Virus record (IMG/VR): IMGVR_UViG_3300021964_000012
Location: 1-64,000 of that record
DNA: 64,000 bases
Reading direction: 5' to 3' (one strand)
This document shows, piece by piece, positions 21,813 to 48,251 of this stretch. The position numbers were made by a program, and so were the translations under genes. The notes under the pieces are model-generated. The model was given only the letters and a program-made list of their open reading frames with translations, was not told where the DNA came from and ran no database searches. Numbering within the stretch: the stretch's first letter is position 1; each line of letters begins with the position of its first letter.

Positions 21813-22115
21813 ATGCAAACAGATCAACTTTCCCAAAATATTAAAACAAGATTTAACCATCAACAAGCAAGGACTATTTTGCGTGAAACCTATCAGGCCA
21901 AGATGGTTTTTGCACACAATGGCGGCATGTGGCGTGCATCACCTGAACTGATTGTGTTGTGCAATTCGTGCGAAGGCACTGTTGTGCTAGAAGACATATA
22001 CAATACTCCAGTTAGTGTCGATAGCAATGAATTATGTGACTTAGCAAAACAACGCTGGCAAGAACAAATGAATGCTTGGCAAGCAGAATACAAAGAAATC
22101 TCAAAAAATCGATGA
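21813..22115 (+). CDS. Hypothetical protein (possible fibre-assembly factor)
   Basis: 100 aa; TAATTA 5 nt before ATG; stop overlaps the next start. Confidence 0.55.
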   Translation: MQTDQLSQNIKTRFNHQQARTILRETYQAKMVFAHNGGMWRASPELIVLCNSCEGTVVLEDIYNTPVSVDSNELCDLAKQRWQEQMNAWQAEYKEISKNR

Positions 22116-22906
22116 CAGTTGGTGCTTTGATTTTTGCTTTTGATAGCGAGATATCTTACACTAGATTGGCAATGGAATGTGCAAGTCGTGTAATCAAATA
22201 TCTTGATATTCCTGTCACGCTTGTAACGGACAAACACATTGACACAGACGTGTTTGAAAAACAAATCATTGTTGACAGAGGTGCTGATACCAATCGTCGA
22301 TTTTTTGTTGATAGACAATCATCTACAACTTGGTATAATTTTGGAAGATATCGTGCTTTAGAATTGTCGCCATACACCAGAACACTGCTCATTGACAGTG
22401 ACTATATGATCAACAATGATGCACTGCTACCATTTTTTACAAGCTCACAACCTTTTTTGTGTCATAGATCAGTACAGAGTATACATCATGCTAAATCAAG
22501 AATAGAAAAGTTTGGTACCAAAAACACAAACATGTGGTGGGCCACTGTGGTTATATTTGAAAAAAGCAATAGTTTCACAGAAGATGTGTTTACAGTTTGG
22601 AAAATGGTCCAAGAAAATTATAAACACTATGCTGAACTTTTTGGTTTTAGTACAAAACAGTTTAGAAATGACTATGCACTAAGCATTGCTCTTTTATTGT
22701 GCAACGGAAATCTACATCCAACACAGTGTGAAATTCCGTGGCCTTTGTTAAATGTTGATACTGATGTAAAAGTAAGTTATATGGACAACACCTGGTGGAT
22801 CGAGTACCAAGAAAAAAATAACAATAAAAAAATATGTGTGAAAAACAATGATTTACACGTGATGTGTAAAACTTATCTAGAAGAATTATATGCAATACCA
22901 AGCTGA
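22112..22906 (+). CDS. Glycosyltransferase, GT8-like (GT-A fold)
   Basis: ALELSPYTRTLLIDSDY (DxD), FRNDYALSIA, LHVMCK; start reassigned to MTVG at 22112 (ATGA overlap). Confidence 0.7.
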   Translation: MTVGALIFAFDSEISYTRLAMECASRVIKYLDIPVTLVTDKHIDTDVFEKQIIVDRGADTNRRFFVDRQSSTTWYNFGRYRALELSPYTRTLLIDSDYMINNDALLPFFTSSQPFLCHRSVQSIHHAKSRIEKFGTKNTNMWWATVVIFEKSNSFTEDVFTVWKMVQENYKHYAELFGFSTKQFRNDYALSIALLLCNGNLHPTQCEIPWPLLNVDTDVKVSYMDNTWWIEYQEKNNNKKICVKNNDLHVMCKTYLEELYAIPS

Positions 22907-23669
22907 AAAAGGATACATGATAGTTGCTGGTCTCGACGAGCAAGTAGACTATTTGACATGTGCTATCACTCTGGCACGAAGTATAAAATACTGGCACAAA
23001 GATGCAAAGGTATGTTTACTTACAGATGTTGAAAACTATCAAAACAGTGTATTTGACTATGTGGTAAATTTTCCTTATGGAAATACTGGCGGCTGGACCA
23101 CAGATTGGCAAGTGTTTGATGCAAGCCCTTTCCATGAAACTGTCAAACTAGAGGCAGATATGCTGGTAAGTGGTCCAATTGATCACTGGTGGACACTGTT
23201 CAGGAACAAACCTGTCTGGATTTCCTCAGGCTGCAGAGACTTTCATGGTCAAACTGCAAAAAATCGACACTATCGCAAAATCTTTGATCAGAATAACCTT
23301 CCAGATGTTTATAATGCCATAACATATTGGAGAGTGAGCAGAGAAGCACAAAACTTTTTTTATCAGACAAGGCAAATCTTTGAACAATGGGATTCAGTAA
23401 AAACTATGATACAGGGTGCTCAAGACGAAATAGCCAGCACAGATCTAGTTTATGCTTTGGGTGCAGATGAATTTGTTACACCTGGTGTAGGTCCGCAGAT
23501 TGTTCATATGAAGTCGCACATAATTGGAACCAGTGCAGAAGATTGGAGTAAAGAACTAGTTTGGGAAGTGATTGATGGAGTGTTACGTATCAACGGACAT
23601 AATCAAACTGGAATCGTACACTATAATCAAAAACACCTAGCCAAAAATTTTGGAGACTATTATGGATGA
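22890..23669 (+). CDS. Glycosyltransferase, GT8-like paralog
   Basis: KGYMIVA..DYLTCAITLARSIK, ASPFHETVKLEADM, STDLVYALG, VHY. Confidence 0.7.
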   Translation: MQYQAEKGYMIVAGLDEQVDYLTCAITLARSIKYWHKDAKVCLLTDVENYQNSVFDYVVNFPYGNTGGWTTDWQVFDASPFHETVKLEADMLVSGPIDHWWTLFRNKPVWISSGCRDFHGQTAKNRHYRKIFDQNNLPDVYNAITYWRVSREAQNFFYQTRQIFEQWDSVKTMIQGAQDEIASTDLVYALGADEFVTPGVGPQIVHMKSHIIGTSAEDWSKELVWEVIDGVLRINGHNQTGIVHYNQKHLAKNFGDYYG

Positions 23670-24009
23670 AGATGTATTTGCAATTTTTAATCGTTTGATA
23701 GCCGATATAGAAAAAAATAAGGTTGACTATGAGTACAGATTATACTATAATAAAGAAACATGTGAGCCTCTTTTTTATACCATGGATGATAAATCTCAAG
23801 GTGATTATATTGTAGTCTCGAAAGAACAATATACCGAAGGACGTTATGATGTCAGGATACGTAACGGCATTATTGAAAAATTAGTGGATGCCGAAGTTTG
23901 GACCAAACTTGTACCAAGCAATGAAGGAACAACTACTAGAGCAGACAACGTGATGATTATAGATCAAAATGGTTCATTTAAATGGAAAATTAAAAGCTAC
24001 TATCAATAA
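23650..24009 (+). CDS. Hypothetical protein
   Basis: 119-aa ORF coupled to the upstream gene. Confidence 0.6.
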   Translation: METIMDEDVFAIFNRLIADIEKNKVDYEYRLYYNKETCEPLFYTMDDKSQGDYIVVSKEQYTEGRYDVRIRNGIIEKLVDAEVWTKLVPSNEGTTTRADNVMIIDQNGSFKWKIKSYYQ

Positions 24010-24036
24010 TTAAGGTGCAGGGGAAAAGTAAAAACA

Positions 24037-24966
24037 ATGAACAAAACTGTTGACGTGGCTGATATAGATTGTGTATATTTAAGCTACGATGAACCCAAGA
24101 AAGAAGAATTTTGGGTAAAAATCCGCAACATAGTGCCATGGGCAAAACGTGTTGATGGAGTAAAAGGTTCAGACGCCGCACACAAAGCTGCCGCTGAAGC
24201 CAGTGATACAGAACGTTTTATATTGATTGATGGTGACAATCTACCTGAAGAAAATTTTTTCAACGAAACCTTAGAATACAAAACTGAACAATATGAACAT
24301 GCCGTATATAGATGGCGTGCCCGTAACGATATCAATGGATTGATGTACGGCAATGGTGGTATAAGCTCGTGGACAAAAACATTTGTACGTAACATGCGTA
24401 CACACGAAGCCTCAGAAGGTGCAGATGACACTGACGTTGAGTTTTGCTTTGATGATCTATATTGGCCAATGTACAACTGTTACTCAACTACATACCCCGG
24501 AGAAAGTGCAAAGCATGCTTTTCGTGCGGGCTTTAGAGAAGGCGTAAAAATGTGCCTTGATAGAGGTACAAAGCCTAGTGCAAGTGAATTCAAAGAACGT
24601 GTACACAACAGGAACTTGGACCATTTAACCATCTGGCACAATGTAGGCGCAGATACTGAACATGGATTGTGGGCAATTGCAGGATCAAGGTTAGGCACAT
24701 GGAAAACCATGCTCAGTGATTGGGATTACAAACAGGTGCAAGACTTTGCTTTACTTGAAGATATGTGGAATGATGTTAAACATATACCTCCTGGAGAACT
24801 TGTTACTATAAAGGCAGAAGATCTAGCAAGACAATTAGCACTTCCTATGAACATATATACTCCGATACAAAGTAAGTTTTTTAAACACCATTATAGAAGT
24901 AATTGGCACAACAAAACAATTATGACTCGCGAAATAGACATAATTAAACAACAAGAGGGTTGGTAA
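24037..24966 (+). CDS. GT-A-like glycosyltransferase
   Basis: DCVYLSYDEP..RVDGVKGSDAAHKAAA..FILIDGD; homologous to the C-terminal domain of 44248..46236. Confidence 0.65.
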   Translation: MNKTVDVADIDCVYLSYDEPKKEEFWVKIRNIVPWAKRVDGVKGSDAAHKAAAEASDTERFILIDGDNLPEENFFNETLEYKTEQYEHAVYRWRARNDINGLMYGNGGISSWTKTFVRNMRTHEASEGADDTDVEFCFDDLYWPMYNCYSTTYPGESAKHAFRAGFREGVKMCLDRGTKPSASEFKERVHNRNLDHLTIWHNVGADTEHGLWAIAGSRLGTWKTMLSDWDYKQVQDFALLEDMWNDVKHIPPGELVTIKAEDLARQLALPMNIYTPIQSKFFKHHYRSNWHNKTIMTREIDIIKQQEGW

Positions 24967-25503
24967 ATGCTAGAAGCAGTTAAATTAAATTATGATATAG
25001 ACATATTCACACGTGCAGATTATCAAGTACATAGTGGTAGCTGTATTAGTCATCAGGTACATGAATTGAAAGATATACACGAAAAATTTGGAGGCTTTCC
25101 AGATAGTTATGATATGGGTAATACTCTTATTAGACAACTATGGTGGACTAGAGAACAAGTAGACTTTGAAGAAATAGGAAAGCAATTGGGAATAGAGGTT
25201 GTAACGATAAGCAGTATTTTACAACCCCCAGGCAACATTATACCAGTACACCGAGATACATTCTTTCAAATTAAAAAAGCACATCCTGATGATACTAGAT
25301 TAAAAATAAGAGCAAATATATACTTGCAAGACTGGTCCATTGGTGAGTTTCTGCAATACGAAAAAGATAACGAATGGCATAATTCAACACATTGGAAAGC
25401 AGGCGAAGGTTGGATTTGGGATAGCGACCATTTACATCTAAGTGCTAATGCCGGAATGAGAGACAAATATACACTACAGGTAAGCGGTTTTTATATCAGA
25501 TGA
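24967..25503 (+). CDS. 2OG-Fe(II) oxygenase / cupin (Asp/Asn beta-hydroxylase-like)
   Basis: QPPGNIIPVHRD (HxD) ... WKAGEGWIWDSDHLHLSANAG (distal His). Confidence 0.7.
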   Translation: MLEAVKLNYDIDIFTRADYQVHSGSCISHQVHELKDIHEKFGGFPDSYDMGNTLIRQLWWTREQVDFEEIGKQLGIEVVTISSILQPPGNIIPVHRDTFFQIKKAHPDDTRLKIRANIYLQDWSIGEFLQYEKDNEWHNSTHWKAGEGWIWDSDHLHLSANAGMRDKYTLQVSGFYIR

Positions 25504-26510
25504 ATATTATTGTAAAAAGCAGTAATAACCATATCTGGAATCTTAATGAAATATATTCTAATATTGATACTGCTATGCTTCATAATCAAGATATTACTCT
25601 CGACTTAAACTACGAAGGTCCTGATATTTCGAATACTGAGCTCGAAAATTATATTATGCACTGTGCAAATTTACACAATTATAATCCATCAAGGATATCG
25701 GTACAAACTTCAAATCAAGTACAGAAACATGACGTTTTTAAAATTGATATACACTCGCCAATTTATATAAAAGAAATTGCAAAAGAATACGAACACACTT
25801 ATGACAAAGATATTATTAAACATTTTGGTATGTTTATAGGAAGAAGTAATGCACCAAGACTTGACTTAGCAAGTTACTTATATTATGCTGGATTTCGTGA
25901 TCAAAGTTATCTTACATACCATTATAATGTGCAAAGCCAATATCATAGAGAAAATATAGGTATTGAAGAATTGTTAATTGACTTTAACCACACAGATTTA
26001 GATATTCCGGCACTTTTTTTAAACAAATGTCCAATTGCAAGTGCTATAGTTGAGCCACAAACAAACATAGATTTATGTCATTGTCAACAGTTATTACAAA
26101 ACGATAATAAAAATTTCTTACAAAATTATCATAACTTTTTTGTTGAAATTGTTTGCGAAACCTGTTATACTGGTAATACGTTTTTCCCAACAGAAAAAAC
26201 TTGGCGACCAATATTACTTAAAACTCCTTTTATTATACAAGGACCACAATGGTACTTGCACAGATTAAAAGATATGGGTTTTAAAACATTCAGTGATTGG
26301 TGGGACGAAGGTTACAGCGAAGATCCTGCTTCTTGGCAACCTACAGAAATTAAAAAAGTTATAAGTTCTATTAGTGAACTAGGGATTACTAACTTACAAG
26401 AAATGTATAGAGAAATGCAGCCAGTACTTGAACATAATAAAAAAAGGTTTTTAGAACTTACGAGCAACGATTTTGACATATTTAAAAATGACAAATATCA
26501 AACAAAATAA
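25500..26510 (+). CDS. TEK-motif (GT10-like) putative glycosyltransferase 1
   Basis: VEIVCET..FPTEKTWRPI..PFIIQG..LKDMGFKTF..WWDEGY. Confidence 0.55.
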   Translation: MNIIVKSSNNHIWNLNEIYSNIDTAMLHNQDITLDLNYEGPDISNTELENYIMHCANLHNYNPSRISVQTSNQVQKHDVFKIDIHSPIYIKEIAKEYEHTYDKDIIKHFGMFIGRSNAPRLDLASYLYYAGFRDQSYLTYHYNVQSQYHRENIGIEELLIDFNHTDLDIPALFLNKCPIASAIVEPQTNIDLCHCQQLLQNDNKNFLQNYHNFFVEIVCETCYTGNTFFPTEKTWRPILLKTPFIIQGPQWYLHRLKDMGFKTFSDWWDEGYSEDPASWQPTEIKKVISSISELGITNLQEMYREMQPVLEHNKKRFLELTSNDFDIFKNDKYQTK

Positions 26511-27927
26511 AGGTGATGGTGTTGATGAGAACTTCAAAAGTGATTTCTTATCAGATGCAGAACGTGCTGAACAAAAGTTAAATACTGTATCACCAAGTTT
26601 TTGTTTAGCTAAATGGAAGCAACTTAGTTTGCATTTAACAACTGGTATGAATAATAGTTGTTATCATCCTCCATTGCATAGGGCAGATGCAAACGCAATC
26701 AGAGACAATCCTAGTGCATTGCATAACACAGAACACAAAAAACAACAACGTAAATTGATGTTGGAAGGTACGCGACCCACTGAGTGTAGTTACTGCTGGG
26801 CTATGGAAGACAATGGTAAACTCAGTGACAGACACTATCGTTCAGGTGAGCCTTGGGCAATTAAAGACTTTGAAACTATAAAAAATTCTTCATGGGATCA
26901 AGATATTACTCCTAGTTATGTTGAAGTAGATTTTAATAGTGCATGTAATCTCAGTTGCAGTTATTGTTCTCCCCAGTATAGTTCAACATGGATGAAAGAA
27001 ACACAACGTGAAGGTGCATGGCCAACATCAACACCACACAATGATCCTAGTCACTTTGTAGGAGAACGCAGGCCCATACCTGCAAGAGAACACAATCCAT
27101 ATGTAGAAGCATTTTGGGAGTGGTGGCCTACACTTTATCCAGAACTTGAACATTTTAGAATGACCGGTGGCGAACCAATGATGGATAAAAACACATATCG
27201 TGTTTTTGATTACGTGCTACAAAATCCTTCGCAAAAGTTACATTTAAGTACAACTTCAAATTTCAGTGTAGAAGAAAAACTTTGGCAACGTTACAAAGCA
27301 TATGTCACTATGCTTTGCGAAAGTCCAGGTACAGTTGAACATTTTATGCAATATGTGAGTCTGGACGGTATGTTTAAGCCAGCAGAATACATGCGTCATG
27401 GTTTAGATTTTAATTTGCTCTGGGATCGAGTAAATCAATTTTTGAACGACATACCAGAACGCAGTAGTATCACTTTTATAATTACTATGAATAATCTTAG
27501 TGTAACCACACTGAAGAATCTGTTTGCTGGTATACTTGGACTTAGGCAAATATACAGTAACACCTATCAACGTGTATGGTTTGATACACCTGTACTACGT
27601 ACACCTACCTGGCAGAGTTTGCAGTTATTGCCAGAAAGTTATGTATATGAACTTGAGCTTTGCAAGACGTGGATGAATGATCAATTAGAAAAACCTGAAA
27701 CACGTTTTAAAGGATTTAAAGATTACGAAGTTAACAGGCTAGACAGAGACATTGCTTGGATGCGTAACGGACAACATCTCGATCCTGTCTATATTAACAA
27801 AAACAAAGCAGACTTCTACAGGTTTTTTAACGAACACGATAGACGTAGAGGCACAGACTTTTTAAAAACTTTTCCTGAAATGTCATCTTGGTGGGAAGAG
27901 TGCAAATATTTGGCTAGTAAACAATAA
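26488..27927 (+). CDS. Radical SAM enzyme with N-terminal SPASM/twitch-like module (subfamily A)
   Basis: CLAKW..SCYHP..CSYCW; CNLSCSYC (CxxxCxxC); TGGEP; start at 26488 or 26473. Confidence 0.85.
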   Translation: MTNIKQNKGDGVDENFKSDFLSDAERAEQKLNTVSPSFCLAKWKQLSLHLTTGMNNSCYHPPLHRADANAIRDNPSALHNTEHKKQQRKLMLEGTRPTECSYCWAMEDNGKLSDRHYRSGEPWAIKDFETIKNSSWDQDITPSYVEVDFNSACNLSCSYCSPQYSSTWMKETQREGAWPTSTPHNDPSHFVGERRPIPAREHNPYVEAFWEWWPTLYPELEHFRMTGGEPMMDKNTYRVFDYVLQNPSQKLHLSTTSNFSVEEKLWQRYKAYVTMLCESPGTVEHFMQYVSLDGMFKPAEYMRHGLDFNLLWDRVNQFLNDIPERSSITFIITMNNLSVTTLKNLFAGILGLRQIYSNTYQRVWFDTPVLRTPTWQSLQLLPESYVYELELCKTWMNDQLEKPETRFKGFKDYEVNRLDRDIAWMRNGQHLDPVYINKNKADFYRFFNEHDRRRGTDFLKTFPEMSSWWEECKYLASKQ

Positions 27928-40655: not shown

Positions 40656-41297
40656 TTCTTCCGCTATCTTTTCATGACCAAGTTCACTTGGATGACCATC
40701 ACCTGAAATAAAGTTGTCATTTGTATAGCTTATTTGTGTAAGGTTTCCAATGGTACCGGGGACTAATTCTCCTGATTTTCCATTGGCAGCAAGTAGCTCC
40801 ATTGCATTTTCTTTAGCATTTTTGTAAAAACGCGATTTGTCAATTTCTGGCACCAGTGTCGGATGCTGCCAACCAAGCAGATAGGTGTCTCGAATATGGT
40901 ATTTGGTGCAAAGATTTTGTAAAATATACAAGGTGTTGTTAAGGTGCCATTCACCTAGTTTATTTGTGTATACCAATCTATAATAGAGTTTATCTCTATC
41001 GTTTTGTGGATGCATTTCGATTGCCTTACCACTTTCATCAAGTGCTATTTGTCTTTCTAAAGCAGTGATAAAAAATATTGCACTATAGGTATGGTCTTTT
41101 TGATAGTCATTCTCAAGGAATTTTCTTAATTGAAATAGCATATGATGTACACTGCTTGAACCTTGACTAAGATCAATTAATTCGCAATTGAGTCTTCTTG
41201 CTAGTATACCTGCATATATTTTTTCTGGCGGATATAGTCCTCCAATTGCCTGACCAGTGGCCCAACTGTCGCCAAAGTTTAGTAGATAGTGTGTCAA
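40608..41297 (-). CDS. SGNH/GDSL-like hydrolase or acyl-transfer protein
   Basis: FGDSW near the N-terminus and DGHPSELGH..IA near the C-terminus. Confidence 0.6.
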   Translation of the reverse strand: MTHYLLNFGDSWATGQAIGGLYPPEKIYAGILARRLNCELIDLSQGSSSVHHMLFQLRKFLENDYQKDHTYSAIFFITALERQIALDESGKAIEMHPQNDRDKLYYRLVYTNKLGEWHLNNTLYILQNLCTKYHIRDTYLLGWQHPTLVPEIDKSRFYKNAKENAMELLAANGKSGELVPGTIGNLTQISYTNDNFISGDGHPSELGHEKIAEELYNWIDNPVNIAPKF

Positions 41298-42325: not shown

Positions 42326-43200
42326 ATTAATATATCATTGCTTTCTTTGTTTAAGAACAATTGTTGATTATGTATGAGATCATCTTTGCAATCCACATAC
42401 ATACTGTGCGTCTTTTTTGATTTTGCAATTCTACACATTTCTGTACATACTGCCTTCCAACGTTCAGTTGCATCTTCAATCTCATCATATGAATGATCAA
42501 CTACATGATCAAATGTTTTATATCCCATTTCACGTAATTGAGTTACTGACCCCATTGCCCCTGCTAAGACAAATGGTTGACAGTTTTTAATTGCTCTAAA
42601 AACTTTTTCAGTTAATCTGACAGGACCGTTGAGATCACTTTCTATAACAAAATTAAAGTAAGCATCACTGTGATGCAGTCCTACTGTGTATTTCATGTCT
42701 GCATGTTCGTCTGGTGTCAATAAGTCACAATGAAAAGGAGCCATTTTTAAAAAAAATTCTGTATGATGTTTTAGACTTCCTAAGTTGCTAGTATCAATTG
42801 GGTTTATATCATCTTCCACAGTGATTCGATTGTTATATCCAAAGTATCCTTTCTTGTGTAAACCTTTACTCCATAATCTTGCCATTGTGTATGCACGCCA
42901 TTGTCTGTGTGTGCGGACAAGTGCAGTAAAATTCTTGCTCCGTTCTTGAGTATGAAATACAGTAGGCATACTTCTATTACGATGGCGGTAAAGCAGTTCA
43001 TCGCTACACGTATAGGTAATACCTGCGAGATCACGACTTTTAGTGGATTTTTCGATAAAATGTAAATTTTCTGCCTTAAAACCTGCTCGTACAGCATCAG
43101 CACTAACATTTTTTACTAATAAATTTTCTGGTAATAAAAAATAAAGATTTGTAATGTTTTTAAACATAATAGTTTCAGCTAGATCTGTTATCAAATCCAT
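42313..43200 (-). CDS. TEK-motif putative glycosyltransferase 3
   Basis: YFNFVIES..LTEKVFRAI..PFV..LREMGYKTF..DHSYD. Confidence 0.55.
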   Translation of the reverse strand: MDLITDLAETIMFKNITNLYFLLPENLLVKNVSADAVRAGFKAENLHFIEKSTKSRDLAGITYTCSDELLYRHRNRSMPTVFHTQERSKNFTALVRTHRQWRAYTMARLWSKGLHKKGYFGYNNRITVEDDINPIDTSNLGSLKHHTEFFLKMAPFHCDLLTPDEHADMKYTVGLHHSDAYFNFVIESDLNGPVRLTEKVFRAIKNCQPFVLAGAMGSVTQLREMGYKTFDHVVDHSYDEIEDATERWKAVCTEMCRIAKSKKTHSMYVDCKDDLIHNQQLFLNKESNDILICPK

Positions 43201-44249
43201 TTTGCCATCATTCCTTGTAGTTCATTCCATAAGAGTTTTTCAAAATCTGCACTGTAAAACCAATTGTAGTTGTGCTCTACAATGCTATTTACTGCGGTTT
43301 GCAAGGTGGTCTTTTCTTTTTGACTCATATTATTAATGTCTTGTAACAGTTTGCCTATCTCATATGTGCGAACTGAATCATCTGCTTCATCGTATGATTC
43401 GTCCCAAAATTCACTAAATGTTTTAAAACCATATCTACGCAAATACTCTAAGCTACCTTTGCAACTCTGTATTATAAAAGGTTGTTGCATTACAATTGGT
43501 TTGAAAGATTTTTCTGTTAGATGATTTTTACGTCCTCGATATACTGTTTCAGTAACTATGTGTATCAGACTATTGTTTGCTTGTTCCCATAAATCAATTT
43601 GATGGCTCTTTGCCGCATAACCTGACCCGTTATCTATCATTAAGGGTAGTCGAACCTGAGGACAATCTAAATCATACTTTACACATAATAATTGTAAACT
43701 TTGTCCTTCGTATGGACATACGTCTGGAAATGATATTAAATTTTTATCAAGTAAATCTCGCCCAACAAACTGTTGAAGCATTTCAATACGATGTTTACGT
43801 TCTCCACCAATTATGTTGTTAGGACAAAGAAAAGTATTATAAGGCTTGCGTTCTGAAAATTTTTGTGCTATACTAGTTCTATTATAACCTCGATACCAAT
43901 CAAGTGCAGCCCAGCCATGAAAGAAATAGTAGTCCATTTCAAGACCATAAGTATCTTTGGCCCAAGAAGCATCTTCGCTGTTGTATTCGCTCGTAACAAG
44001 TCTACATTTGTTTGTATGCAAATAAAGTGGTTTGAACTGGTCAATAAATGGTATAAATCTATTACGATAAATTGGTTCTTGATCCCACATTATAATTCTA
44101 TTATTAGGAACGCCATGTACTGCCGGCTTGTTACAAATATCCTTAAAATCTGTACTACCAAATGGGTCAAACCAATGGAGTCCTGTACTGGGTATGTTTT
44201 TAACAACTGGTACAAAAACACCATCGTAAATTTCATCAATTCTAATCAT
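43191..44249 (-). CDS. TEK-motif putative glycosyltransferase 4
   Basis: IHIVTET..LTEKSFKPI..PFII..LRRYGFKTF..WDESYD. Confidence 0.55.
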   Translation of the reverse strand: MIRIDEIYDGVFVPVVKNIPSTGLHWFDPFGSTDFKDICNKPAVHGVPNNRIIMWDQEPIYRNRFIPFIDQFKPLYLHTNKCRLVTSEYNSEDASWAKDTYGLEMDYYFFHGWAALDWYRGYNRTSIAQKFSERKPYNTFLCPNNIIGGERKHRIEMLQQFVGRDLLDKNLISFPDVCPYEGQSLQLLCVKYDLDCPQVRLPLMIDNGSGYAAKSHQIDLWEQANNSLIHIVTETVYRGRKNHLTEKSFKPIVMQQPFIIQSCKGSLEYLRRYGFKTFSEFWDESYDEADDSVRTYEIGKLLQDINNMSQKEKTTLQTAVNSIVEHNYNWFYSADFEKLLWNELQGMMAKWI

Positions 44250-46236
44250 GTTTGATAAATGTTACTCATACAATAAAGATTCTCTTGCACAGTGCAAGAC
44301 TAGGTACTTATGGGTACTAAATAAGCACTGTGATTATTCTAATTTTGACTTTGCCTGGGAGCCGGCTCCCTGGGAAAAAGATTTTAGACATGCTTTTGGA
44401 TCACAGTGGCAAAAGGATTCTGGTACATATCTTGTTCCAAAACATGGGTATACCGAAACAAAATACAATCAAGAACAAACAGTGACACGATTACCTACAC
44501 AGGATAATTGGGATAGCACAGAATTTGAATTTGACTATTCATGGCACCCTGATCCAACAGAGCCAGATTTTATCTATCAATTTGGCACACAATGGCAAAA
44601 AACAGGCGGCCCAAGGTACGTGATTCCTGGTGCTACAAACATAAAATATGTAGATAGTCCTCGCATTAATAAAACATCAGTTGATTTACATTGGGTTGTA
44701 CCTGAAGCAAATATCGAAAACTTTGATTATACATGGCATCCTGACAACACTGAGAAACCTTTCATTTATCAATTTGGCACACAACATCAAAAAACAGGTG
44801 GGCCACGATATGAGGTACCAGGAGCAATCGAAGTCAAGTATGTAGGAGATATTACCACAAAAGTAAAAGCTGTTGCTTCAGGCGTAGTGCTTATTAAACA
44901 TCTTAACAAAGACTTTGTTTATCAAGGTACAATTCCTATTTTAAGTACTACTAGATTTATATCAAACTATCTTGACACACTAATACGTGTTTTGAAAAAG
45001 CTAAATGGTCATGAGTATGTTTGGATAATAAGCGACCTATGCGATTATGAAAACTTTGACTTTAGTTGGCATCCTGAACTATGGCAACACAGCATGTTAC
45101 ATGTATTTCCTAGTAACGAACAAGAGTTTGGTGATACGTTTTTTATTAATGTAGAAAGTTTTTTGGAAAATGCAAAAAACATCAAATTGTTGGAATGGTA
45201 CAATCCTTTAAATTTTGTTCCTTATACAGTAAAACGTAAGGATTGTCCTCAGATAAAGTATGATTCAGACAGTGTAGTTGATGCAGTCTGGAGTCATAAT
45301 TTTCAAGAGCCAGTGGTACAATTTTACAGGTATAAACCAGAGAAACAAGTTACCATTAGTTTATGGCAAGAAAGACTCAGAACAGTTGTTCCTTTAGCAA
45401 AAGGAAGTGAGTGTGTGTTAGTACCTAAAGATGCAAAAAATTATATTAATACACAAGTATATGATTATAAATGGATAGATAAAAAACACAAACCTAAACA
45501 AGCTAGACCACTTGATATTGTTTTTATTAGCAATGATGAAAGCAATGCCGAAAAAAATTGGGAACATCTAATTAAAGTACATAAAGGTCAAAATCGTATT
45601 GTCAGAGTAGATGGAGTAAAAGGCAGAGCAGAAGCATATCGTGCTAGTTTAGAAGCAAGTAACACCGACTGGGCATTTTGTGTGTTCGCTAAACTTGAAG
45701 TGAACGCAGATTTTGATTGGACGTGGCAACCAGATAGGTTACAACAAGCAAAGCACTATATATTTCATGCTAAAAATCCTGTAAATGGATTGGTATATGG
45801 ACACATGGCAATGATTGCATATAATAAAAAACTTGTTGCAGTGAACCAATCTCAAGGGTTAGACTTTACACTTGATCAAGAACATGAAGTTGTGCCACTT
45901 CTCAGTGGTATTGCTCGTTATGCTGATGACCCATGGATTGCCTGGCGTAGTGCGTTTCGTGAATGTTTAAAGCTCAAAAATAGTTTGCCCAACATAGAAT
46001 CCAACTACCGTCTTAAACAGTGGTTAAAAGCAGATACAACGTCTGCTGTAGCTGGTTGGAGTGCAATTGGTGCACAAGATGCAGTTGATTACTATGACGC
46101 AGTTGAAGGCAATTTTGCAAAACTGCGTCTAACATACGAATGGGATTGGCTGGCAGAATACCTATTCAAGCAACACAATCTAACACCTGATCAATTATGT
46201 ACTCAACTTCAAGATCAGTCAATTCAGGGTATATAG
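44248..46236 (+). CDS. Multidomain protein: WHP repeats plus C-terminal GT-A-like domain
   Basis: 64-aa tandem repeat FDY.WHPD..FIYQFGTQ.QKTGGPRY; LDIVFISNDE..RVDGVKG..AY. Confidence 0.7.
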   Translation: MFDKCYSYNKDSLAQCKTRYLWVLNKHCDYSNFDFAWEPAPWEKDFRHAFGSQWQKDSGTYLVPKHGYTETKYNQEQTVTRLPTQDNWDSTEFEFDYSWHPDPTEPDFIYQFGTQWQKTGGPRYVIPGATNIKYVDSPRINKTSVDLHWVVPEANIENFDYTWHPDNTEKPFIYQFGTQHQKTGGPRYEVPGAIEVKYVGDITTKVKAVASGVVLIKHLNKDFVYQGTIPILSTTRFISNYLDTLIRVLKKLNGHEYVWIISDLCDYENFDFSWHPELWQHSMLHVFPSNEQEFGDTFFINVESFLENAKNIKLLEWYNPLNFVPYTVKRKDCPQIKYDSDSVVDAVWSHNFQEPVVQFYRYKPEKQVTISLWQERLRTVVPLAKGSECVLVPKDAKNYINTQVYDYKWIDKKHKPKQARPLDIVFISNDESNAEKNWEHLIKVHKGQNRIVRVDGVKGRAEAYRASLEASNTDWAFCVFAKLEVNADFDWTWQPDRLQQAKHYIFHAKNPVNGLVYGHMAMIAYNKKLVAVNQSQGLDFTLDQEHEVVPLLSGIARYADDPWIAWRSAFRECLKLKNSLPNIESNYRLKQWLKADTTSAVAGWSAIGAQDAVDYYDAVEGNFAKLRLTYEWDWLAEYLFKQHNLTPDQLCTQLQDQSIQGI

Positions 46237-47260
46237 GTAAACTAAGCACACGTCGTGAAAGGCTTGTACTGCTGGCAAGCAATGGTTTTACACCATGAAA
46301 TGATCCTATTTCGTTAATACCATATTCATAGTGTACTTTGGAATCTATACCTGCTTGTTGTAAATACTCTTTTATTTTATTTCTATCTGTATTGCAATCA
46401 ATGACAAATTTATGAAAACAATGTTCCTGTAAATTAGAACTATCAATTAAGCATCTAATATCTGACTTTTCGTTTAATCTTTCTATCCAATAAAGACCAA
46501 TTGTTTGTCTGCGTTCTTGCCATTCGTCTATGTATTTGGTTTTAACAAGCATTGTTGCACAGTCTATTTCACTCATACGACTGTTTGTTCCACCAGTAAC
46601 ATGGGCCGACCCATTGGCTCTGTACCATCTTACAAATCTATCTATACTTACAGTGTTGGTAAGCACGGCTCCGCCGTTGGCATAGTTTGCAAGATTCTTT
46701 GTAGGATCAAAACTTATTGCACTGGTGGAGATTCTTTTACAATCCCAACTGAGCCAATGCTGAGCCGCATCTTCTACCAAGATCCAATCGTGTTCTGCAA
46801 CCAAATCTCTAAAACGTTGTGTTTGATAATTCTTTAGACTGTTGCCATACAATCCTACCAAACACACTGCCATTGTGTTGTAGTGATGTGGTTGTATACT
46901 GTCAATATCCAGCATGCCATATGAGTCAGTATCAGCTACCACAACTTCCCATCCTGCTGAAATCCATGAGTTTGCAGTTGCACGATAGGTTAAGTTCGGA
47001 ACGATAACCTGTGGCTTATTGAGATTAAGTTGTTTGTAATGATAACGTGCTATTGCTTCAAGTGCAACTGTACCTGAACCAATTGTAATGGCATGATCAA
47101 CGTTGTTTCGTTTTGCTAACCATGATTCAAATTCTTGTGTGTAGTTGCCATTCATCAGTTGGCCACTACGCAATACTATATCAATGGTATCGAGAACTTC
47201 TGATCTAAGGTTATTATACTGTTTTTTTAGTCCAGTAAACGGAATTTCTAAGCCACTCAT
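46166..47260 (-). CDS. DegT/DnrJ/EryC1/StrS PLP-dependent sugar aminotransferase
   Basis: SGTVAL, EDAAQ, SFDPTKNL (PLP Lys), GGA, NSRMSE, LSLPIYPEL. Confidence 0.92.
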   Translation of the reverse strand: MSGLEIPFTGLKKQYNNLRSEVLDTIDIVLRSGQLMNGNYTQEFESWLAKRNNVDHAITIGSGTVALEAIARYHYKQLNLNKPQVIVPNLTYRATANSWISAGWEVVVADTDSYGMLDIDSIQPHHYNTMAVCLVGLYGNSLKNYQTQRFRDLVAEHDWILVEDAAQHWLSWDCKRISTSAISFDPTKNLANYANGGAVLTNTVSIDRFVRWYRANGSAHVTGGTNSRMSEIDCATMLVKTKYIDEWQERRQTIGLYWIERLNEKSDIRCLIDSSNLQEHCFHKFVIDCNTDRNKIKEYLQQAGIDSKVHYEYGINEIGSFHGVKPLLASSTSLSRRVLSLPIYPELTDLEVEYIIDQVLDCVA

Positions 47261-48251
47261 GGTATAGTTTGATGCCTTCTTCTAAGTTGATTTTTGGATC
47301 AAAGTTCAAATCCGTTTTTGCTTTATCAATGTTTAATGTGCCTCTACTAGGCATATTTGCATCTCGATCATTGATCTCAACTGTGCCTTTGCCTACAATT
47401 TTAACAACTGCGTCTGCGGCTTCTTTTATTGTTTTAGCATCACCTTTAGTTAGATGATAGATGCCAGTTTTACCCTTCAGCAATGCTAAAATCATTCCTT
47501 CGGCTAGATCATCAACATAGGTAAAATCCAATCTCTCATCTTCACCATTTACTGATAGTGTTCTATCTGCTTTAGCATTTAGAATAAATTTTCCTATAAC
47601 TCTATCACAGTTATCCAATGGGCCATAAACTGCACTTGGTCGAACTGTTACATAATCAAGGTTGTGTTGTTTATTAAAGTTTTCTACCAATTTTTCACCA
47701 GCATGTTTCCATATAGCATAACTGCCTTTTGGATCTGGAGTGTGTGTTTCATCAGCAGGAAACGAAAAGTCGCCAAGTACCATGCTTGAACTTACATACA
47801 ATAACCTTTTGATGTTGTGTCTTGCACTGTTTTCCAATATGTTAGCAAGTCCCTGACACATTGTATGTGCAGCTTCTACTGGGTTTTCACTTGCCAACTT
47901 TTCATTTGGAAAACTAGCAAGATGTACAACATAGTCTGGTTTCAATTTTAAGAAAATATCATTTACCAATTCAATTTCAGCAACATCAATTTTGTGAATC
48001 ATTGTGTCATCATCAAATTTTGCCAGTCTTTCATTGTATAGATATTCTAATTCACTTTTGTCTAATAGTCCGTAAGTGGTTAGTGCATCAATTACTTCGA
48101 CTCGATGATTTTGTTTTTGCAACTGTTCAACAACCTTGTGCCCAATGAAGCCAAGACCTCCTGTCACAAGTATTCTTTTTTGTTCAACCTTTACTGCGGT
48201 TTGTTTAGGTTGTCTTGTGATTGATTTTTTCTTTTTTCTATTCTTTGCCAT
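47214..48251 (-). CDS. NAD-dependent epimerase/dehydratase with basic N-terminal extension
   Basis: VTGGLGFIG, YAIWK, VYGP, LDFTYVDD. Confidence 0.9.
   Translation of the reverse strand: MAKNRKKKKSITRQPKQTAVKVEQKRILVTGGLGFIGHKVVEQLQKQNHRVEVIDALTTYGLLDKSELEYLYNERLAKFDDDTMIHKIDVAEIELVNDIFLKLKPDYVVHLASFPNEKLASENPVEAAHTMCQGLANILENSARHNIKRLLYVSSSMVLGDFSFPADETHTPDPKGSYAIWKHAGEKLVENFNKQHNLDYVTVRPSAVYGPLDNCDRVIGKFILNAKADRTLSVNGEDERLDFTYVDDLAEGMILALLKGKTGIYHLTKGDAKTIKEAADAVVKIVGKGTVEINDRDANMPSRGTLNIDKAKTDLNFDPKINLEEGIKLYHEWLRNSVYWTKKTV

What the first reader, a model, noticed from the sequence alone, without database searches (positions are those of the whole stretch)
22112..48251. 26-kb phage-encoded glycan-tailoring factory attached to the tail genes (top candidate system)
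Seen: about 25 tightly coupled genes starting right after the fibre genes: 2 GT8-like, 2 GT-A-like, 4 TEK-motif transferases, 2 epimerases, DegT aminotransferase, amidinotransferase, carbamoyltransferase, FkbM methylase, 2OG oxygenase, SGNH-like protein, 5 SPASM radical SAM enzymes, MetK, MtnN and SufT. No Wzx/Wzy/ABC exporter is visible, and late-type promoter motifs head the locus. Inference: a cytoplasmic pathway building a heavily modified oligosaccharide on virion proteins (glycan shield or adhesion), or on DNA. I know of no characterised phage pathway with this radical-SAM-rich composition.
Basis: partly seen in the sequence, partly recalled or inferred. Interest (0 to 1): 0.92.

Follow-up and report, generated by a model that had tools for sequence, protein, structure and literature searches.

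The report
Jumbo-phage radical-SAM sugar-tailoring gene cluster
An uncultivated 328-kb aquatic phage carries, next to its baseplate and fibre genes, a 26-kb block of soluble sugar-modifying and radical-SAM enzymes; related phages share its core, its chemistry and target are unknown, and it most likely builds an unusual glycan on a virion fibre protein.

Summary
The gene block is real. All five radical SAM proteins belong to NCBIfam NF033640 (N-terminal twitch domain). MetK, an MtnN-like nucleosidase, a SufT-like protein, a NodU/TobZ-type carbamoyltransferase, FkbM, DegT, two SDR sugar enzymes and an amidinotransferase are confirmed by profiles. The GT8-like, GT-A-like, 2OG-oxygenase and SGNH calls rest on sub-threshold hits and motifs. 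The four TEK proteins are a real, Pfam-less family of unproven function. No locus protein has a membrane segment.

The T4 late motif is absent, and the window's only two perfect sigma-70 consensus promoters lie inside the locus.

Across 77 related viral contigs one syntenic core recurs: Ser/Thr-rich fibre-like protein, s100, GTa, GTb, DxD309, R1-R5, U352. U352 gives a confident model with no match among solved structures. The other enzymes are accessory. Ralstonia jumbo phage RsoM2USA carries a reduced version (s100-GTa-GTb-DxD309-R1) at the same place after its virion genes.

In two of three bacterial genomes examined, relatives of these radical SAM enzymes sit among glycan genes.

Best reading: a cytoplasmic glycan pathway, probably acting on a fibre protein. 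Host-surface, peptide and DNA targets remain open. A conserved 34-codon gene tied to the carbamoyltransferase is new.

The parts
19149..20705 (+). fib2: tail-fibre-like virion protein upstream of the locus
   Evidence: Hits PHROGs for virion structural and tail fibre proteins (E 1e-10 to 4e-5). Syntenic in relatives.
20855..21766 (+). fib3: Ser/Thr-rich fibre-like protein directly before the core; candidate acceptor (inference)
   Evidence: 33% Ser+Thr against a median of 11% for window proteins; orthologues have 23-34%. Conserved N-terminal and RYFFNAGG motifs. Found in 54 of 80 loci. No family hit.
21813..22115 (+). s100: conserved 100-aa protein that heads the core; function unknown
   Evidence: Found in 57 loci. 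Has a homologue, RsoM2USA_354, at the same position.
22112..22906 (+). GTa: probable GT-A/GT8-like transferase (weak)
   Evidence: Paralogue of GTb (hhalign 98.7%). D95 and D97 are invariant. Homologue in RsoM2USA. No Pfam or PDB hit.
22890..23669 (+). GTb: probable GT8-like transferase (weak)
   Evidence: The profile aligns with glycogenin from the N-terminus through the DxD position, at E 0.07-0.25. Hits phrog_1903. Homologue in RsoM2USA.
23650..24009 (+). s119: small conserved protein, function unknown
   Evidence: Found in 47 loci. No family hit.
24037..24966 (+). DxD309: the most conserved core protein. Rossmann-like N-terminal half with an invariant DGD, plus a helical C-terminal half. 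Putative GT-A-like transferase.
   Evidence: Found in 72 loci. 77% mean column identity, with D65-G66-D67 invariant. Model pLDDT 72, beta-alpha-beta pattern, no significant PDB fold hit. Glycos_transf_2 at E 0.14. 35% identical homologue in RsoM2USA.
24967..25503 (+). Cupin/2OG-oxygenase-like protein (accessory, weak)
   Evidence: Asp_Arg_Hydrox at E 0.11. HxD...H residues are visible. Found in only about 7 loci.
25500..26510 (+). TEK1: member of a Pfam-less family with an invariant E-K motif (accessory)
26473..27927 (+). R1: N-terminal-twitch radical SAM enzyme
   Evidence: NF033640 at 299 bits. Found in all 80 loci. 32% identical full-length homologue RsoM2USA_349.
27943..28776 (+). SDR, GDP-fucose-synthase-like epimerase/reductase (accessory)
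   Evidence: Pfam Epimerase at E 2e-31. NCBIfam best hit is GDP-L-fucose synthase, E 3e-22.
28761..29819 (+). TEK2 (accessory)
29728..29756 (+). Perfect sigma-70 consensus promoter inside the 3' end of TEK2, ahead of R2
   Evidence: Perfect sites occur 27 times on the coding strand against 4 on the other strand in 77 related loci.
29806..31170 (+). R2: N-twitch radical SAM enzyme. The true start is uncertain, because the ORF's listed TTG at 29728 is the promoter's -35 hexamer.
   Evidence: NF033640 at 296 bits.
31154..32437 (+). R3: N-twitch radical SAM enzyme
   Evidence: NF033640 at 405 bits. More than 7500 metagenomic homologues.
32434..33639 (+). R4: N-twitch radical SAM enzyme
   Evidence: NF033640 at 342 bits.
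33636..34202 (+). MtnN-like nucleosidase (accessory); would remove 5'-deoxyadenosine, MTA or SAH
   Evidence: PNP_UDP_1 at E 2e-13. NCBIfam nucleosidase at E 9e-23, below the equivalog cut-off.
34196..35506 (+). R5: N-twitch radical SAM enzyme
   Evidence: NF033640 at 283 bits.
35496..36554 (+). U352: conserved partner of the radical SAM block; its fold has no match among solved structures
   Evidence: Found in 63 loci. Model pLDDT 87 and pTM 0.86. No PDB fold match, TM below 0.25. Only uncharacterised phage proteins match in BFVD. 676 clusters at 50% identity. A distant homologue again lies beside three radical SAM genes.
36551..36579 (+). Second perfect sigma-70 consensus promoter; it overlaps the U352 stop codon and the s34 start codon
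   Evidence: The same arrangement is conserved in L005-L008, L013 and L014.
36578..36682 (+). s34: 34-codon gene for a very basic peptide ending ...RKRDPFIYK. It has an AAGGAG Shine-Dalgarno sequence, and its stop codon overlaps the next gene's ATG.
   Evidence: Found in 52 loci, with the last 21 residues nearly invariant. Entropy by codon position is 0.52/0.29/1.23, against 1.65-1.77 in the flanks. Co-occurs with the carbamoyltransferase: both 41, neither 10, s34 alone 1, CarbT alone 0.
36679..37779 (+). MetK, S-adenosylmethionine synthetase (accessory)
   Evidence: All three Pfam domains, E 4e-31 to 6e-58.
37890..39395 (+). NodU/CmcH/TobZ-type carbamoyltransferase
   Evidence: Carbam_trans_N and Carbam_trans_C at E 4e-35 and 1e-50. 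Found in 45 loci.
39386..40228 (+). FkbM-family methyltransferase (accessory)
   Evidence: TIGR01444 at 88 bits, cut-off 37.7.
40174..40539 (+). SufT/PaaD-like Fe-S assembly protein (accessory)
   Evidence: FeS_assembly_P at E 1e-15. SUF_assoc at E 2e-25.
40608..41297 (-). SGNH/GDSL-like protein (accessory, weak)
   Evidence: GDS and DxxH motifs. Lipase_GDSL at E 0.06.
41294..42325 (-). Amidinotransferase
   Evidence: The profile hits AGAT, SxtG, HsvA and StrB1 at E 2e-27 to 5e-18, and the C-terminal catalytic Cys is conserved.
42313..44249 (-). TEK3 and TEK4
   Evidence: TEK3 is 295 aa here, against 366-393 aa in orthologues.
44248..46236 (+). Big662: five FDxxWxPD-type repeats plus a DxD309-like domain that lacks the DGD motif
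   Evidence: hhalign 97.6%, E 4e-12. Follows U352 in the divergent subclade.
46166..47260 (-). DegT/PseC-type sugar aminotransferase
   Evidence: Pfam at E 1e-53.
47214..48257 (-). NDP-hexose 4,6-dehydratase-like SDR
   Evidence: Pfam at E 4e-45. Best NCBIfam hit is dTDP-glucose 4,6-dehydratase at E 2e-39.

Best explanation
The locus is a phage-encoded, fully cytoplasmic glycan-building and glycan-editing pathway embedded in the baseplate and fibre module of an uncultivated relative of the Rak2- and RsoM2USA-type jumbo myophages.

Shown:
- A conserved core of s100, two paralogous GT8-like proteins, DxD309, five distinct N-terminal-twitch radical SAM enzymes and U352.
- Swappable cassettes around it. 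Some make and decorate NDP-sugars: a 4,6-dehydratase, a DegT aminotransferase, an SDR epimerase/reductase, an amidinotransferase, a carbamoyltransferase, FkbM and the TEK family.
- Other cassettes sustain radical SAM turnover: MetK for SAM supply, the nucleosidase for removal of 5'-deoxyadenosine, and SufT for Fe-S cluster assembly.

Inferred:
- Host NDP-hexoses are converted to amino-dideoxy sugars carrying guanidino, carbamoyl or methyl groups.
- The GT-like proteins transfer sugars directly onto a soluble acceptor. The most likely acceptor is the Ser/Thr-rich fibre-like protein encoded immediately upstream, or the neighbouring fibre proteins.
- The five radical SAM enzymes, together with U352, carry out redox-neutral or oxidative edits of the sugars (for example epimerisation, dehydrogenation, deoxygenation or C-C/C-methyl chemistry). 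These edits would give the virion a glycan that host enzymes cannot make or cleave.
For: Enzyme identities.

No transmembrane segment, flippase, polymerase or lipid-carrier transferase is present.

The core is co-conserved and syntenic directly after fib2 and fib3 in 77 related contigs. R3 identity falls to 57% and fib3 identity to 28% across them.

The five radical SAM paralogues are only 20-27% identical to each other, yet each has its own orthologue at 45-89% identity in every locus. They are therefore five separate, retained functions.

The same module, s100-GTa-GTb-DxD309-R1, lies after the baseplate hub, wedge, giant protein and MS-confirmed virion proteins in cultured phage RsoM2USA (PMC8504454).

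The 4,6-dehydratase, DegT and Big662 follow U352 even in the most divergent subclade.

Cellular N_Twi_rSAM genes sit among GT4, GT2 and GT9 genes in an Acidobacteriota genome. In an Alphaproteobacteria genome one sits beside an AT3-SGNH O-acyltransferase and an NDP-hexose C-methyltransferase.

fib3 is 33% Ser+Thr, and this richness is conserved.

In many relatives fib2, fib3, s100 and GTa are separated by only a few bases.
Against: No glycosyltransferase assignment reaches significance. The TEK family is unassigned.

No radical SAM enzyme of this family has a known reaction. No relevant paper was found.

Adjacency to fibre genes is also what pelagimyophage authors read as host O-antigen modification.

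Ser/Thr richness is common in fibres without glycosylation.

Perfect sigma-70 promoters inside the locus suggest that at least part of it can be expressed independently of late structural transcription.

One bacterial N_Twi context was uninformative (L087).

A conserved small peptide gene within the block leaves room for a peptide substrate.
Confidence: 0.5

Rival explanations
1. Remodelling of the host surface. The soluble enzymes make unusual NDP-sugars and peripheral transferases that feed the host's own O-antigen, capsule or S-layer glycan machinery during infection. This would change receptors, either to exclude other phages or to help release.
For: This is the interpretation published for tail-fibre-adjacent clusters of GT8 enzymes, LPS genes and radical SAM cassettes in pelagimyophages and cyanomyophages (PMC7029224). 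Bacterial homologues of the radical SAM enzymes lie in polysaccharide-type clusters. Sigma-70 consensus promoters fit expression by host RNA polymerase before late genes. Many LPS transferases have no membrane segment.
Against: The locus has no priming transferase, flippase, polymerase, ligase or any membrane protein. The core keeps a fixed position inside the virion structural module from RsoM2USA to this clade. A lytic jumbo phage has little time to benefit from changing new surface polymer.
Confidence: 0.2
2. A peptide-based or small-molecule product. The radical SAM enzymes mature a ribosomal peptide, or the locus builds an aminoglycoside-like or cofactor-like compound on a peptide scaffold. 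The sugars would then be added as in mycofactocin or the glycocins.
For: A 34-codon gene under strong purifying selection lies inside the block, with a nearly invariant C-terminal 21 residues. Twitch/SPASM radical SAM enzymes often act on peptides, and there are weak hits to WgkB, YhhB, StsB and PapB maturases. The set of a DegT-type aminotransferase, an amidinotransferase, a TobZ-type carbamoyltransferase and a twitch radical SAM enzyme mirrors aminoglycoside pathways. A cyanophage trio of this kind was annotated as 'antibiotic synthesis' genes (PMC12801897).
Against: s34 tracks the carbamoyltransferase, not the radical SAM enzymes. Ten loci keep R1-R5 and U352 without s34, and in L076 s34 and CarbT move together. 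RsoM2USA has GTa, GTb, DxD309 and R1 but no s34. No RRE/PqqD-like domain or peptidase was detected. The bacterial contexts point to glycans. The pattern of a conserved C-terminus with a stop/start overlap fits a regulatory arrest peptide equally well.
Confidence: 0.15
3. DNA hypermodification. The transferases and tailoring enzymes decorate a modified base in the phage genome with a complex sugar to evade restriction or CRISPR.
For: Phage transferases can build di- and trisaccharides on DNA (Pyle et al. 2024, as cited in PMC12619734). ThyX lies next to the locus. A distant U352 and radical SAM cluster has a ThyA-family gene three genes upstream (L096). High SAM demand would fit stoichiometric modification.
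Against: The window contains no hydroxymethylase, DpdA/TGT, base-kinase or dNTP-exclusion enzyme. Eight or more putative transferases plus O-carbamoyl, O-methyl and guanidino tailoring far exceed any known DNA glycan. The locus is anchored in the structural module, not the replication module. Only 64 of 328 kb could be inspected.
Confidence: 0.08

Closest known systems
Mycobacteriophage virion O-glycosylation (Freeman et al. 2023, as cited in PMC12619734)
   Same: Phage-encoded soluble glycosyltransferases lie next to the structural genes whose products they modify. The glycan ends up on the virion.
   Different: Those systems have two to four transferases, no radical SAM enzymes, no sugar-nucleotide tailoring and no SAM or Fe-S support genes. 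Here glycosylation itself is not demonstrated.
Giant-virus cytoplasmic glycosylation (chlorovirus PBCV-1 capsid glycans; Mimivirus fibril glycans with viosamine and bacillosamine clusters). From my own knowledge.
   Same: A virus-encoded, exporter-free pathway with 4,6-dehydratase and aminotransferase steps, methyltransferases and several soluble transferases decorates virion surface proteins.
   Different: The hosts are eukaryotic. No radical SAM enzymes are involved. There is no sequence relationship to the GT-like proteins here.
'Host recognition clusters' of pelagimyophages and cyanomyophages (PMC7029224); a T4-like environmental genome with 12 radical SAM genes (PMC5332604)
   Same: Tail fibre genes are mixed with GT8-type transferases, LPS-type sugar genes and radical SAM cassettes in aquatic myophages. 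The function is uncharacterised.
   Different: Those are hypervariable regions in T4-like phages of about 140-250 kb. Here a fixed, ordered core of five orthologous radical SAM enzymes, U352 and DxD309 is conserved across a jumbo-phage clade and partly in RsoM2USA. R1, R3, GTb and DxD309 each found only one to three GenBank phage records by tblastn.
Bacterial polysaccharide clusters containing NF033640 radical SAM genes (Acidobacteriota L086, Alphaproteobacteria L089)
   Same: The radical SAM family is the same (32-39% identity) and lies beside GT2, GT4 and GT9 transferases, a sugar C-methyltransferase and an O-acyltransferase.
   Different: They have one to three copies. U352, DxD309, the TEK family and s34 are absent. 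These loci are uncharacterised too.
Aminoglycoside and aminocyclitol pathways (BtrN twitch radical SAM dehydrogenase, StrB1 amidinotransferase, TobZ carbamoyltransferase, StsC/BtrS DegT-type aminotransferases). From my own knowledge.
   Same: The same four enzyme classes act on amino sugars or cyclitols. BtrN shows that a twitch radical SAM enzyme can oxidise a sugar-like secondary alcohol.
   Different: The twitch domain is C-terminal in BtrN and N-terminal here. There is no inositol or 2-deoxy-scyllo-inosose synthase. The amidinotransferase is only 62-81% conserved among clade orthologues and is accessory.
Mycofactocin pathway (MftA peptide, MftC radical SAM/SPASM enzyme, MftF GT2). From my own knowledge.
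   Same: It combines a small invariant peptide, a radical SAM enzyme and a glycosyltransferase that adds methylated oligoglucose.
   Different: s34 co-varies with the carbamoyltransferase, not with the radical SAM enzymes. No RRE or peptidase is present. TIGR03962 gives only a weak hit (E 5e-5, against a 265-bit cut-off).

Membership tests
NCBIfam NF033640 N_Twi_rSAM (twitch domain-containing radical SAM protein) | Whole-protein score above the curated cut-off of 170 bits | tested here: met
   R1 299, R2 296, R3 405, R4 342 and R5 283 bits.
NCBIfam NF033640 N_Twi_rSAM | CX3CX2C radical SAM cluster motif, plus Cys ligands for an auxiliary cluster N-terminal to the core | tested here: met
   C148/C152/C155 and C33/C52/C94/C97 (R3 numbering) are invariant in the five paralogues and in three Vibrio phage homologues. 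The Pfam SPASM hit lies at residues 9-98, before the Radical_SAM hit.
Glycosyltransferase family 8 (glycogenin/LgtC type) | Significant match to a GT8 profile or structure, including the DxD motif | tested here: inconclusive
   The GTb profile matches glycogenin at E 0.07-0.25, aligned through the DxD position. GTa has no hit. There is no Pfam hit at E below 0.01. GTa and GTb are paralogues.
GT-A fold glycosyltransferase (DxD309 and the Big662 C-terminal domain) | Rossmann-like nucleotide-sugar domain with a DxD motif, recognisable by fold | tested here: inconclusive
   DGD is invariant and follows a beta-alpha-beta-alpha-beta stretch. Foldseek gives nothing significant; the best GT-A-like hits have TM about 0.2. 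Glycos_transf_2 is at E 0.14. The Big662 domain is homologous but lacks DGD.
GT10-type fucosyltransferase-like (the four 'TEK' proteins) | Match to Glyco_transf_10 or a related profile or structure | tested here: not met
   None of 23 members has a Pfam hit. No PDB sequence matches. 2815 relatives all lack Pfam domains. The resemblance of the ...TEK...P(F)...G motif to the fucosyltransferase motif is from memory only.
Amidinotransferase (AGAT/StrB1/SxtG) | Full-length profile match and a C-terminal catalytic Cys | tested here: met
   E 2e-27 to 5e-18 over three stretches that span the protein. C328 is invariant.
NodU/CmcH/TobZ carbamoyltransferase | Both Carbam_trans_N and Carbam_trans_C domains score above gathering cut-offs | tested here: met
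   122 and 172 bits, against cut-offs of 24 and 27. The match to the NodU equivalog is below its cut-off.
MTA/SAH (5'-deoxyadenosine) nucleosidase MtnN | Score above an equivalog cut-off | tested here: not met
   Superfamily membership is clear (PNP_UDP_1 at 50.8 bits, above its 25.1 cut-off). The best NCBIfam nucleosidase hit is 81 bits against a 129-bit cut-off. The protein is nucleosidase-like and its substrate is unproven.
Wzx/Wzy- or ABC-dependent surface polysaccharide locus | Membrane priming transferase, flippase or ABC exporter, and polymerase | tested here: not met
   No hydrophobic segment occurs in any of 38 window proteins, and there are no such Pfam hits.
RiPP radical SAM maturation cluster | A precursor peptide gene that co-occurs with the maturase(s), plus an RRE or a peptidase | tested here: not met
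   s34 exists but co-varies with the carbamoyltransferase. Ten loci have all five radical SAM enzymes without it. No RRE or peptidase domain was found.
Phage DNA hypermodification locus | A base-modifying entry enzyme (dNMP hydroxymethylase, DpdA/TGT) with transferases acting on DNA | tested here: inconclusive
   None occurs in the 64-kb window; only ThyX is present. The other 264 kb of the contig were not examined.
Phage virion glycosylation system | Glycan demonstrated on a virion protein and dependent on the phage transferases | not testable with these tools
   Only the genomic criterion is met: transferase-like genes lie next to structural genes.

The most novel reading that the evidence does not exclude
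The conserved block of five N-terminal-twitch radical SAM enzymes plus U352 is a new kind of glycan-editing machine. It would perform several successive radical reactions on sugars, possibly after they are attached to a phage fibre protein, and so give the virion a glycan chemistry with no cellular counterpart. Alongside it, the s34 peptide would be a new arrest or scaffold peptide that controls or serves a carbamoyltransferase.
Probability: 0.25. Interest if true: 0.9.

Novelty: new variant of a known kind. Interest (0 to 1): 0.72.

Why it matters
Virus-encoded glycosylation of virions is established for a few mycobacteriophages and for giant viruses. No phage pathway that combines it with radical SAM chemistry has been characterised.

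This locus is not a curiosity of one contig. R3 alone has more than 7500 homologues in public metagenomes, many on contigs of 230-350 kb. The ordered core is retained while the proteins diverge to 30-60% identity.

It gathers several families with no known function:
- NF033640 radical SAM enzymes, five of them.
- U352, a confident structural model with no match among solved structures.
- DxD309.
- The TEK family, about 2800 relatives with no Pfam domain.
- A 34-residue peptide that is nearly invariant over its last 21 residues.

Working out the product would assign reactions to a curated but uncharacterised radical SAM family that also occurs in bacterial polysaccharide loci. It would also test whether aquatic jumbo phages coat their host-recognition apparatus with exotic glycans. 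That bears on adsorption, resistance to host or environmental glycosidases and proteases, and the meaning of 'LPS genes' reported in marine phage genomes. RsoM2USA offers a cultured entry point to the ancestral part of the module.

Tried and rejected
DNA and family searches that found nothing:
- Megablast of the locus against GenBank phages gave no match.
- Pfam, PHROGs and NCBIfam found nothing significant for GTa, GTb, s119, DxD309, the cupin-like protein, TEK1-4, U352, the SGNH-like protein or Big662.
- Profile searches against PDB sequences found nothing for DxD309, U352, GTa or TEK.
- Foldseek against PDB found nothing significant for DxD309 or U352.
- A profile of the radical SAM paralogues was too divergent to scan genomes.

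Ideas tested and dropped:
- That the 712-775-aa U352 fusions join a radical SAM domain to U352. They do not. Their contigs were too short to be informative.
- T4-type late promoters. The motif is absent.
- A conserved promoter motif ahead of fib3, s100 or DxD309. None exists.
- That s34 is the RiPP precursor of the five radical SAM enzymes. The co-occurrence data weaken this.
- That the 'moraphage' lineage (PMC12619734) is this clade. Nothing links them: no radical SAM is mentioned, and that lineage has a different phylogenetic neighbourhood.
- Haliscomenobacter as host, suggested by a 'Haliscomenobacter MAG' holding two contigs of this phage clade (L082, L083). Proteobacterial-type sigma-70 promoters argue against a Bacteroidota host, so the binning is not trusted.

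Searches for s34:
- The protein database refuses queries under 40 residues.
- GenBank phages gave no match.
- No paper contains the motif.

Full report
WHAT THE WINDOW IS.
The window is the first 64 kb of IMG/VR contig IMGVR_UViG_3300021964_000012, which is 328,292 bp long. GC content is 35-40% throughout, with no compositional break at the locus. The left part encodes the following:
- a baseplate hub-like protein;
- a gp25-like wedge protein;
- an 1135-aa baseplate wedge protein, 33-35% identical to those of Atu_ph07, GAP32, CBB, 121Q and other Rak2-type jumbo myophages;
- a 4490-aa protein with FG-GAP and CBM5/12 signatures;
- a tail-fibre-like protein at 19149-20705.
No GenBank phage matches the locus at the DNA level.

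CHECK OF THE OBSERVATION.
From 22076 to 48257 there are 26 large ORFs, most with overlapping or abutting ends. Orientation is plus to 40539, minus to 44249, plus to 46236 and minus to 48257.

- The five radical SAM proteins all pass the curated cut-off of NCBIfam NF033640, 'twitch domain-containing radical SAM protein', at 283-405 bits against 170.
- The SPASM/twitch-type cluster domain lies N-terminal to the radical SAM core.
- Seven cysteines (four plus CX3CX2C) are invariant.
- MetK, a NodU/TobZ-type carbamoyltransferase, an FkbM methyltransferase, a SufT/PaaD-like DUF59 protein, a PNP_UDP_1 nucleosidase, a DegT aminotransferase and two extended SDRs are confirmed. One SDR is closest to dTDP-glucose 4,6-dehydratase and the other to GDP-fucose synthase.
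- A profile of orthologues establishes the amidinotransferase. It hits AGAT, SxtG, HsvA and StrB1 at E 2e-27 to 5e-18.

The transferase calls are much weaker:
- GTa and GTb are paralogues. GTb reaches glycogenin only at E 0.07, although it aligns through the DxD position.
- DxD309 has an invariant DGD after a Rossmann-like stretch, but no significant fold or family match.
- The C-terminal domain of Big662 is homologous to DxD309 but has lost the DGD.
- The four TEK proteins form a genuine family with an invariant E-K. Neither they nor 2815 relatives have a Pfam domain or a PDB relative.
- The cupin and SGNH calls are sub-threshold.

No protein of the locus has a membrane-spanning segment. The statement 'no exporter' therefore holds.

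The promoter statement does not hold. The T4 late motif TATAAATA is absent from the whole window, against 7.3 copies expected. No motif recurs upstream of fib3, s100 or DxD309 in relatives. The only two perfect TTGACA-N17-TATAAT sites in the 64 kb are inside the locus on the coding strand, at 29728 before R2 and at 36551 after U352. The expectation is 0.15, and 2 of 100 shuffles reach two sites. In 77 related loci, perfect sites number 27 on the coding strand and 4 on the other.

CONSERVATION.
A scan of IMG/VR with R3 returned at least 100 loci, of which 80 were kept, at 57-100% identity. The protein database holds more than 7500 homologues, many on contigs of 230-350 kb.

Mapping all window proteins onto the loci shows one ordered core in nearly every locus with enough flank: fib2, fib3, s100, GTa, GTb, (s119), DxD309, R1, R2, R3, R4, R5, U352. 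The five radical SAM paralogues are only 20-27% identical to one another. Each nevertheless has its own orthologue at 45-89% in every locus, so these are five retained functions and not recent duplicates.

The remaining genes come and go: the cupin-like protein, TEK1-4, the SDR at 27943, the nucleosidase, MetK, FkbM, SufT, the SGNH-like protein and the amidinotransferase. The carbamoyltransferase is present in most loci. In the most divergent subclade, Big662, DegT and the 4,6-dehydratase follow U352 directly. The amino-dideoxy-sugar branch is therefore old as well.

A CULTURED RELATIVE.
Among 50,697 GenBank phage records, only Ralstonia jumbo phage RsoM2USA has homologues of DxD309 (35%), GTb (25%) and R1 (32%, full length). 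In RsoM2USA they lie in the order s100 (ORF354), GTa (353), GTb (352), ORF351, DxD309 (350), R1 (349), then a DxD309-like gene (348). An SDR sits at ORF358.

This run lies directly after the baseplate hub, gp25-like wedge, wedge, giant ORF361, ORF359 and ORF356. Three of these were found in virions by mass spectrometry (PMC8504454). The gene order is the same as in the window. The ancestral unit is therefore s100-GTa-GTb-DxD309-R1 inside the structural module. R2-R5, U352 and the cassettes are an elaboration in the aquatic clade.

WHAT THE UNKNOWNS LOOK LIKE.
U352 gives a confident model (pLDDT 87, pTM 0.86). It has no match among solved structures, with TM below 0.25. It matches only uncharacterised phage proteins in BFVD, including one from Atu_ph07. 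The family has 676 clusters at 50% identity. A distant member (E 3e-28) again sits beside three radical SAM/SPASM genes in unrelated contigs. The link between U352 and radical SAM enzymes therefore extends beyond this clade.

DxD309 is the most conserved protein of the locus, at 77% mean column identity.

WHICH SUBSTRATE CLASS?
Bacterial genomes provide independent evidence.
- In an Acidobacteriota contig of 513 kb, three NF033640 genes are interleaved with GT4, double-GT2 and GT9-methyltransferase genes.
- In an Alphaproteobacteria contig, the gene lies between an AT3-SGNH O-acyltransferase and a TylC3-type NDP-hexose C-methyltransferase.
- A third context, in Cytophagales, was uninformative.

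The dehydratase, aminotransferase, reductase, carbamoyl, methyl and amidino enzymes in the phage locus point the same way. Together this evidence favours sugars as the substrates of the radical SAM enzymes. MetK, the nucleosidase and SufT fit a pathway that consumes SAM stoichiometrically and needs many Fe-S clusters. That reading is an inference from the known roles of these families.

WHICH ACCEPTOR?
This is not shown. Three things favour a virion protein:
- the fixed position in the structural module from RsoM2USA to this clade;
- the lack of any lipid-carrier or export function;
- fib3, the gene directly upstream, which is 33% Ser+Thr (three times the window median), a richness kept in orthologues at 23-34%.
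In many relatives fib2, fib3 and s100 are separated by a handful of bases.

Three things count against it. Authors of the pelagimyophage study read similar clusters of fibres, GT8 enzymes and radical SAM cassettes as host O-antigen modification (PMC7029224). Fibres are often Ser/Thr-rich anyway. Internal sigma-70 promoters suggest expression that is not tied to late transcription.

A DNA target is the least likely. The window has no entry enzyme for base modification (only ThyX), and the tailoring repertoire is far richer than any known DNA glycan. Only a fifth of the genome was visible, however.

A NEW SMALL GENE.
Between U352 and MetK lies a 34-codon ORF (36578-36682). An AAGGAG sequence sits six bases before its ATG, and its stop codon overlaps the next gene's start (ATGA).

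It is present in 52 related loci, and its last 21 residues (ending RKRDPFIYK) are almost invariant. Entropy by codon position over those codons is 0.52, 0.29 and 1.23, while the flanks are unconserved at 1.65-1.77. It is therefore a protein-coding gene under strong purifying selection.

It does not track the radical SAM enzymes. It co-occurs with the carbamoyltransferase: both in 41 loci, neither in 10, s34 alone in 1, CarbT alone in 0. The pair moves together in L076. RsoM2USA and the other radical SAM clusters lack it. This weakens a RiPP reading of the five radical SAM enzymes.

Three readings remain for s34: a substrate or scaffold of the carbamoyltransferase, a small subunit, or a leader peptide. 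The conserved C-terminal stretch is about the length of the ribosome exit tunnel and the stop/start overlap is preserved, so a leader peptide that stalls ribosomes to control the downstream gene is plausible. No literature or GenBank phage match exists.

COMPARISON AND NOVELTY.
The locus works most like the virus-encoded cytoplasmic glycosylation systems of mycobacteriophages, chloroviruses and mimiviruses. It resembles in composition the uncharacterised 'host recognition clusters' of marine T4-like phages.

It differs from all of these in several ways:
- a fixed five-member radical SAM core from one curated but uncharacterised family;
- a partner protein whose fold has no match among solved structures;
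- dedicated SAM and Fe-S support genes;
- the s34-carbamoyltransferase pair.

Literature searches found no characterised phage pathway of this kind.

I rate it a new variant of a known kind (viral glycan-tailoring loci), with a real chance that the radical SAM core represents new chemistry.

Confidence that this is a soluble sugar-tailoring and glycosylation locus of the structural module is about 0.8. Confidence in the full explanation, with a virion fibre protein as acceptor, is 0.5.

Noticed in passing
window 36578-36682 (+): A 34-codon gene for a very basic peptide whose last 21 residues are nearly invariant in 52 related loci. It has a strong Shine-Dalgarno sequence, and its stop codon overlaps the next ATG. 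It co-occurs almost perfectly with the carbamoyltransferase (41 both, 10 neither). It may be an arrest/leader peptide or a substrate of that enzyme.
   Followed up: yes
window 29728-29756 and 36551-36579 (+): These are the only two perfect TTGACA-N17-TATAAT sites in the 64 kb, and both lie inside the locus on the coding strand. Related loci have 27 such sites on the coding strand and 4 on the other. They imply a host with a canonical sigma-70, which argues against a Bacteroidota host.
   Followed up: partly
whole window: The octamer TATAAATA (the T4 late promoter) is absent on both strands, against 7.3 copies expected. The reason for this avoidance is unexplained.
   Followed up: no
window 29728-29830: The listed TTG start of the R2 ORF is the -35 hexamer of the promoter and overlaps the end of TEK2. 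The real R2 start is probably about 80 bases downstream.
   Followed up: partly
window 21792-21820: A perfect 12-bp inverted repeat (GTTTGCATACT...AGTATGCAAAC) encloses the start codon of s100. It could be a translational or terminator-like hairpin between fib3 and the core.
   Followed up: no
window 60928-61917 (-): A sixth radical SAM gene (329 aa, generic MoaA/viperin/QueE-like, not NF033640) lies between tRNA-Thr and the tRNA-Trp/tRNA-Arg pair, outside the locus.
   Followed up: no
window 4933-18405 (+): A 4490-aa ORF with FG-GAP and CBM5/12 signatures follows the baseplate wedge gene. RsoM2USA has a 2541-aa, virion-confirmed protein at the same position.
   Followed up: partly
window 37779-37889 and 40539-40655 (+): Two small ORFs encode hydrophobic peptides of 36 and 38 aa, in the gaps before the carbamoyltransferase and after SufT. 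They are found only in the near-identical contigs, so they may not be genes.
   Followed up: partly
window 42313-43200 (-): TEK3 is 295 aa here, while its orthologues are 366-393 aa. It may be N-terminally truncated or a shortened variant.
   Followed up: no
window 44247-44250: The start codons of TEK4 (minus strand) and Big662 (plus strand) overlap by two bases back to back. This leaves no intergenic space for divergent promoters.
   Followed up: no
L082 and L083 (NZ_JBBAKG010000001.1, NZ_JBBAKG010000003.1): Two contigs of 183 kb and 148 kb filed under a 'Haliscomenobacter sp.' MAG each carry the full phage core. They are phage genomes binned into a bacterial MAG.
   Followed up: partly
L085 (DIVA01000093.1, Bacteriovoracaceae MAG) 6040-18036: An array of eight NF033640-type radical SAM genes in a row, without GTa, GTb, DxD309 or U352. 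The context was not annotated.
   Followed up: no
P0324, P0335, P0337, P0338, P0342, P0348, P0369; L091-L093: U352-like domains occur fused to an unrelated N-terminal region of about 400 residues, giving proteins of 712-775 aa. That region is not a radical SAM domain.
   Followed up: partly
L081 (Vibrio phage K566) 14965-21701: Cultured Vibrio phages K566 and K567 carry four distant NF033640-like genes in one block (about 21-25% identity). None of the other core proteins is present.
   Followed up: partly
window 50443-53957 (-): A DUF2201 metallopeptidase/VWA protein (50443-51705) and a MoxR-type AAA ATPase (52863-53957) lie close together to the right of the locus.
   Followed up: no
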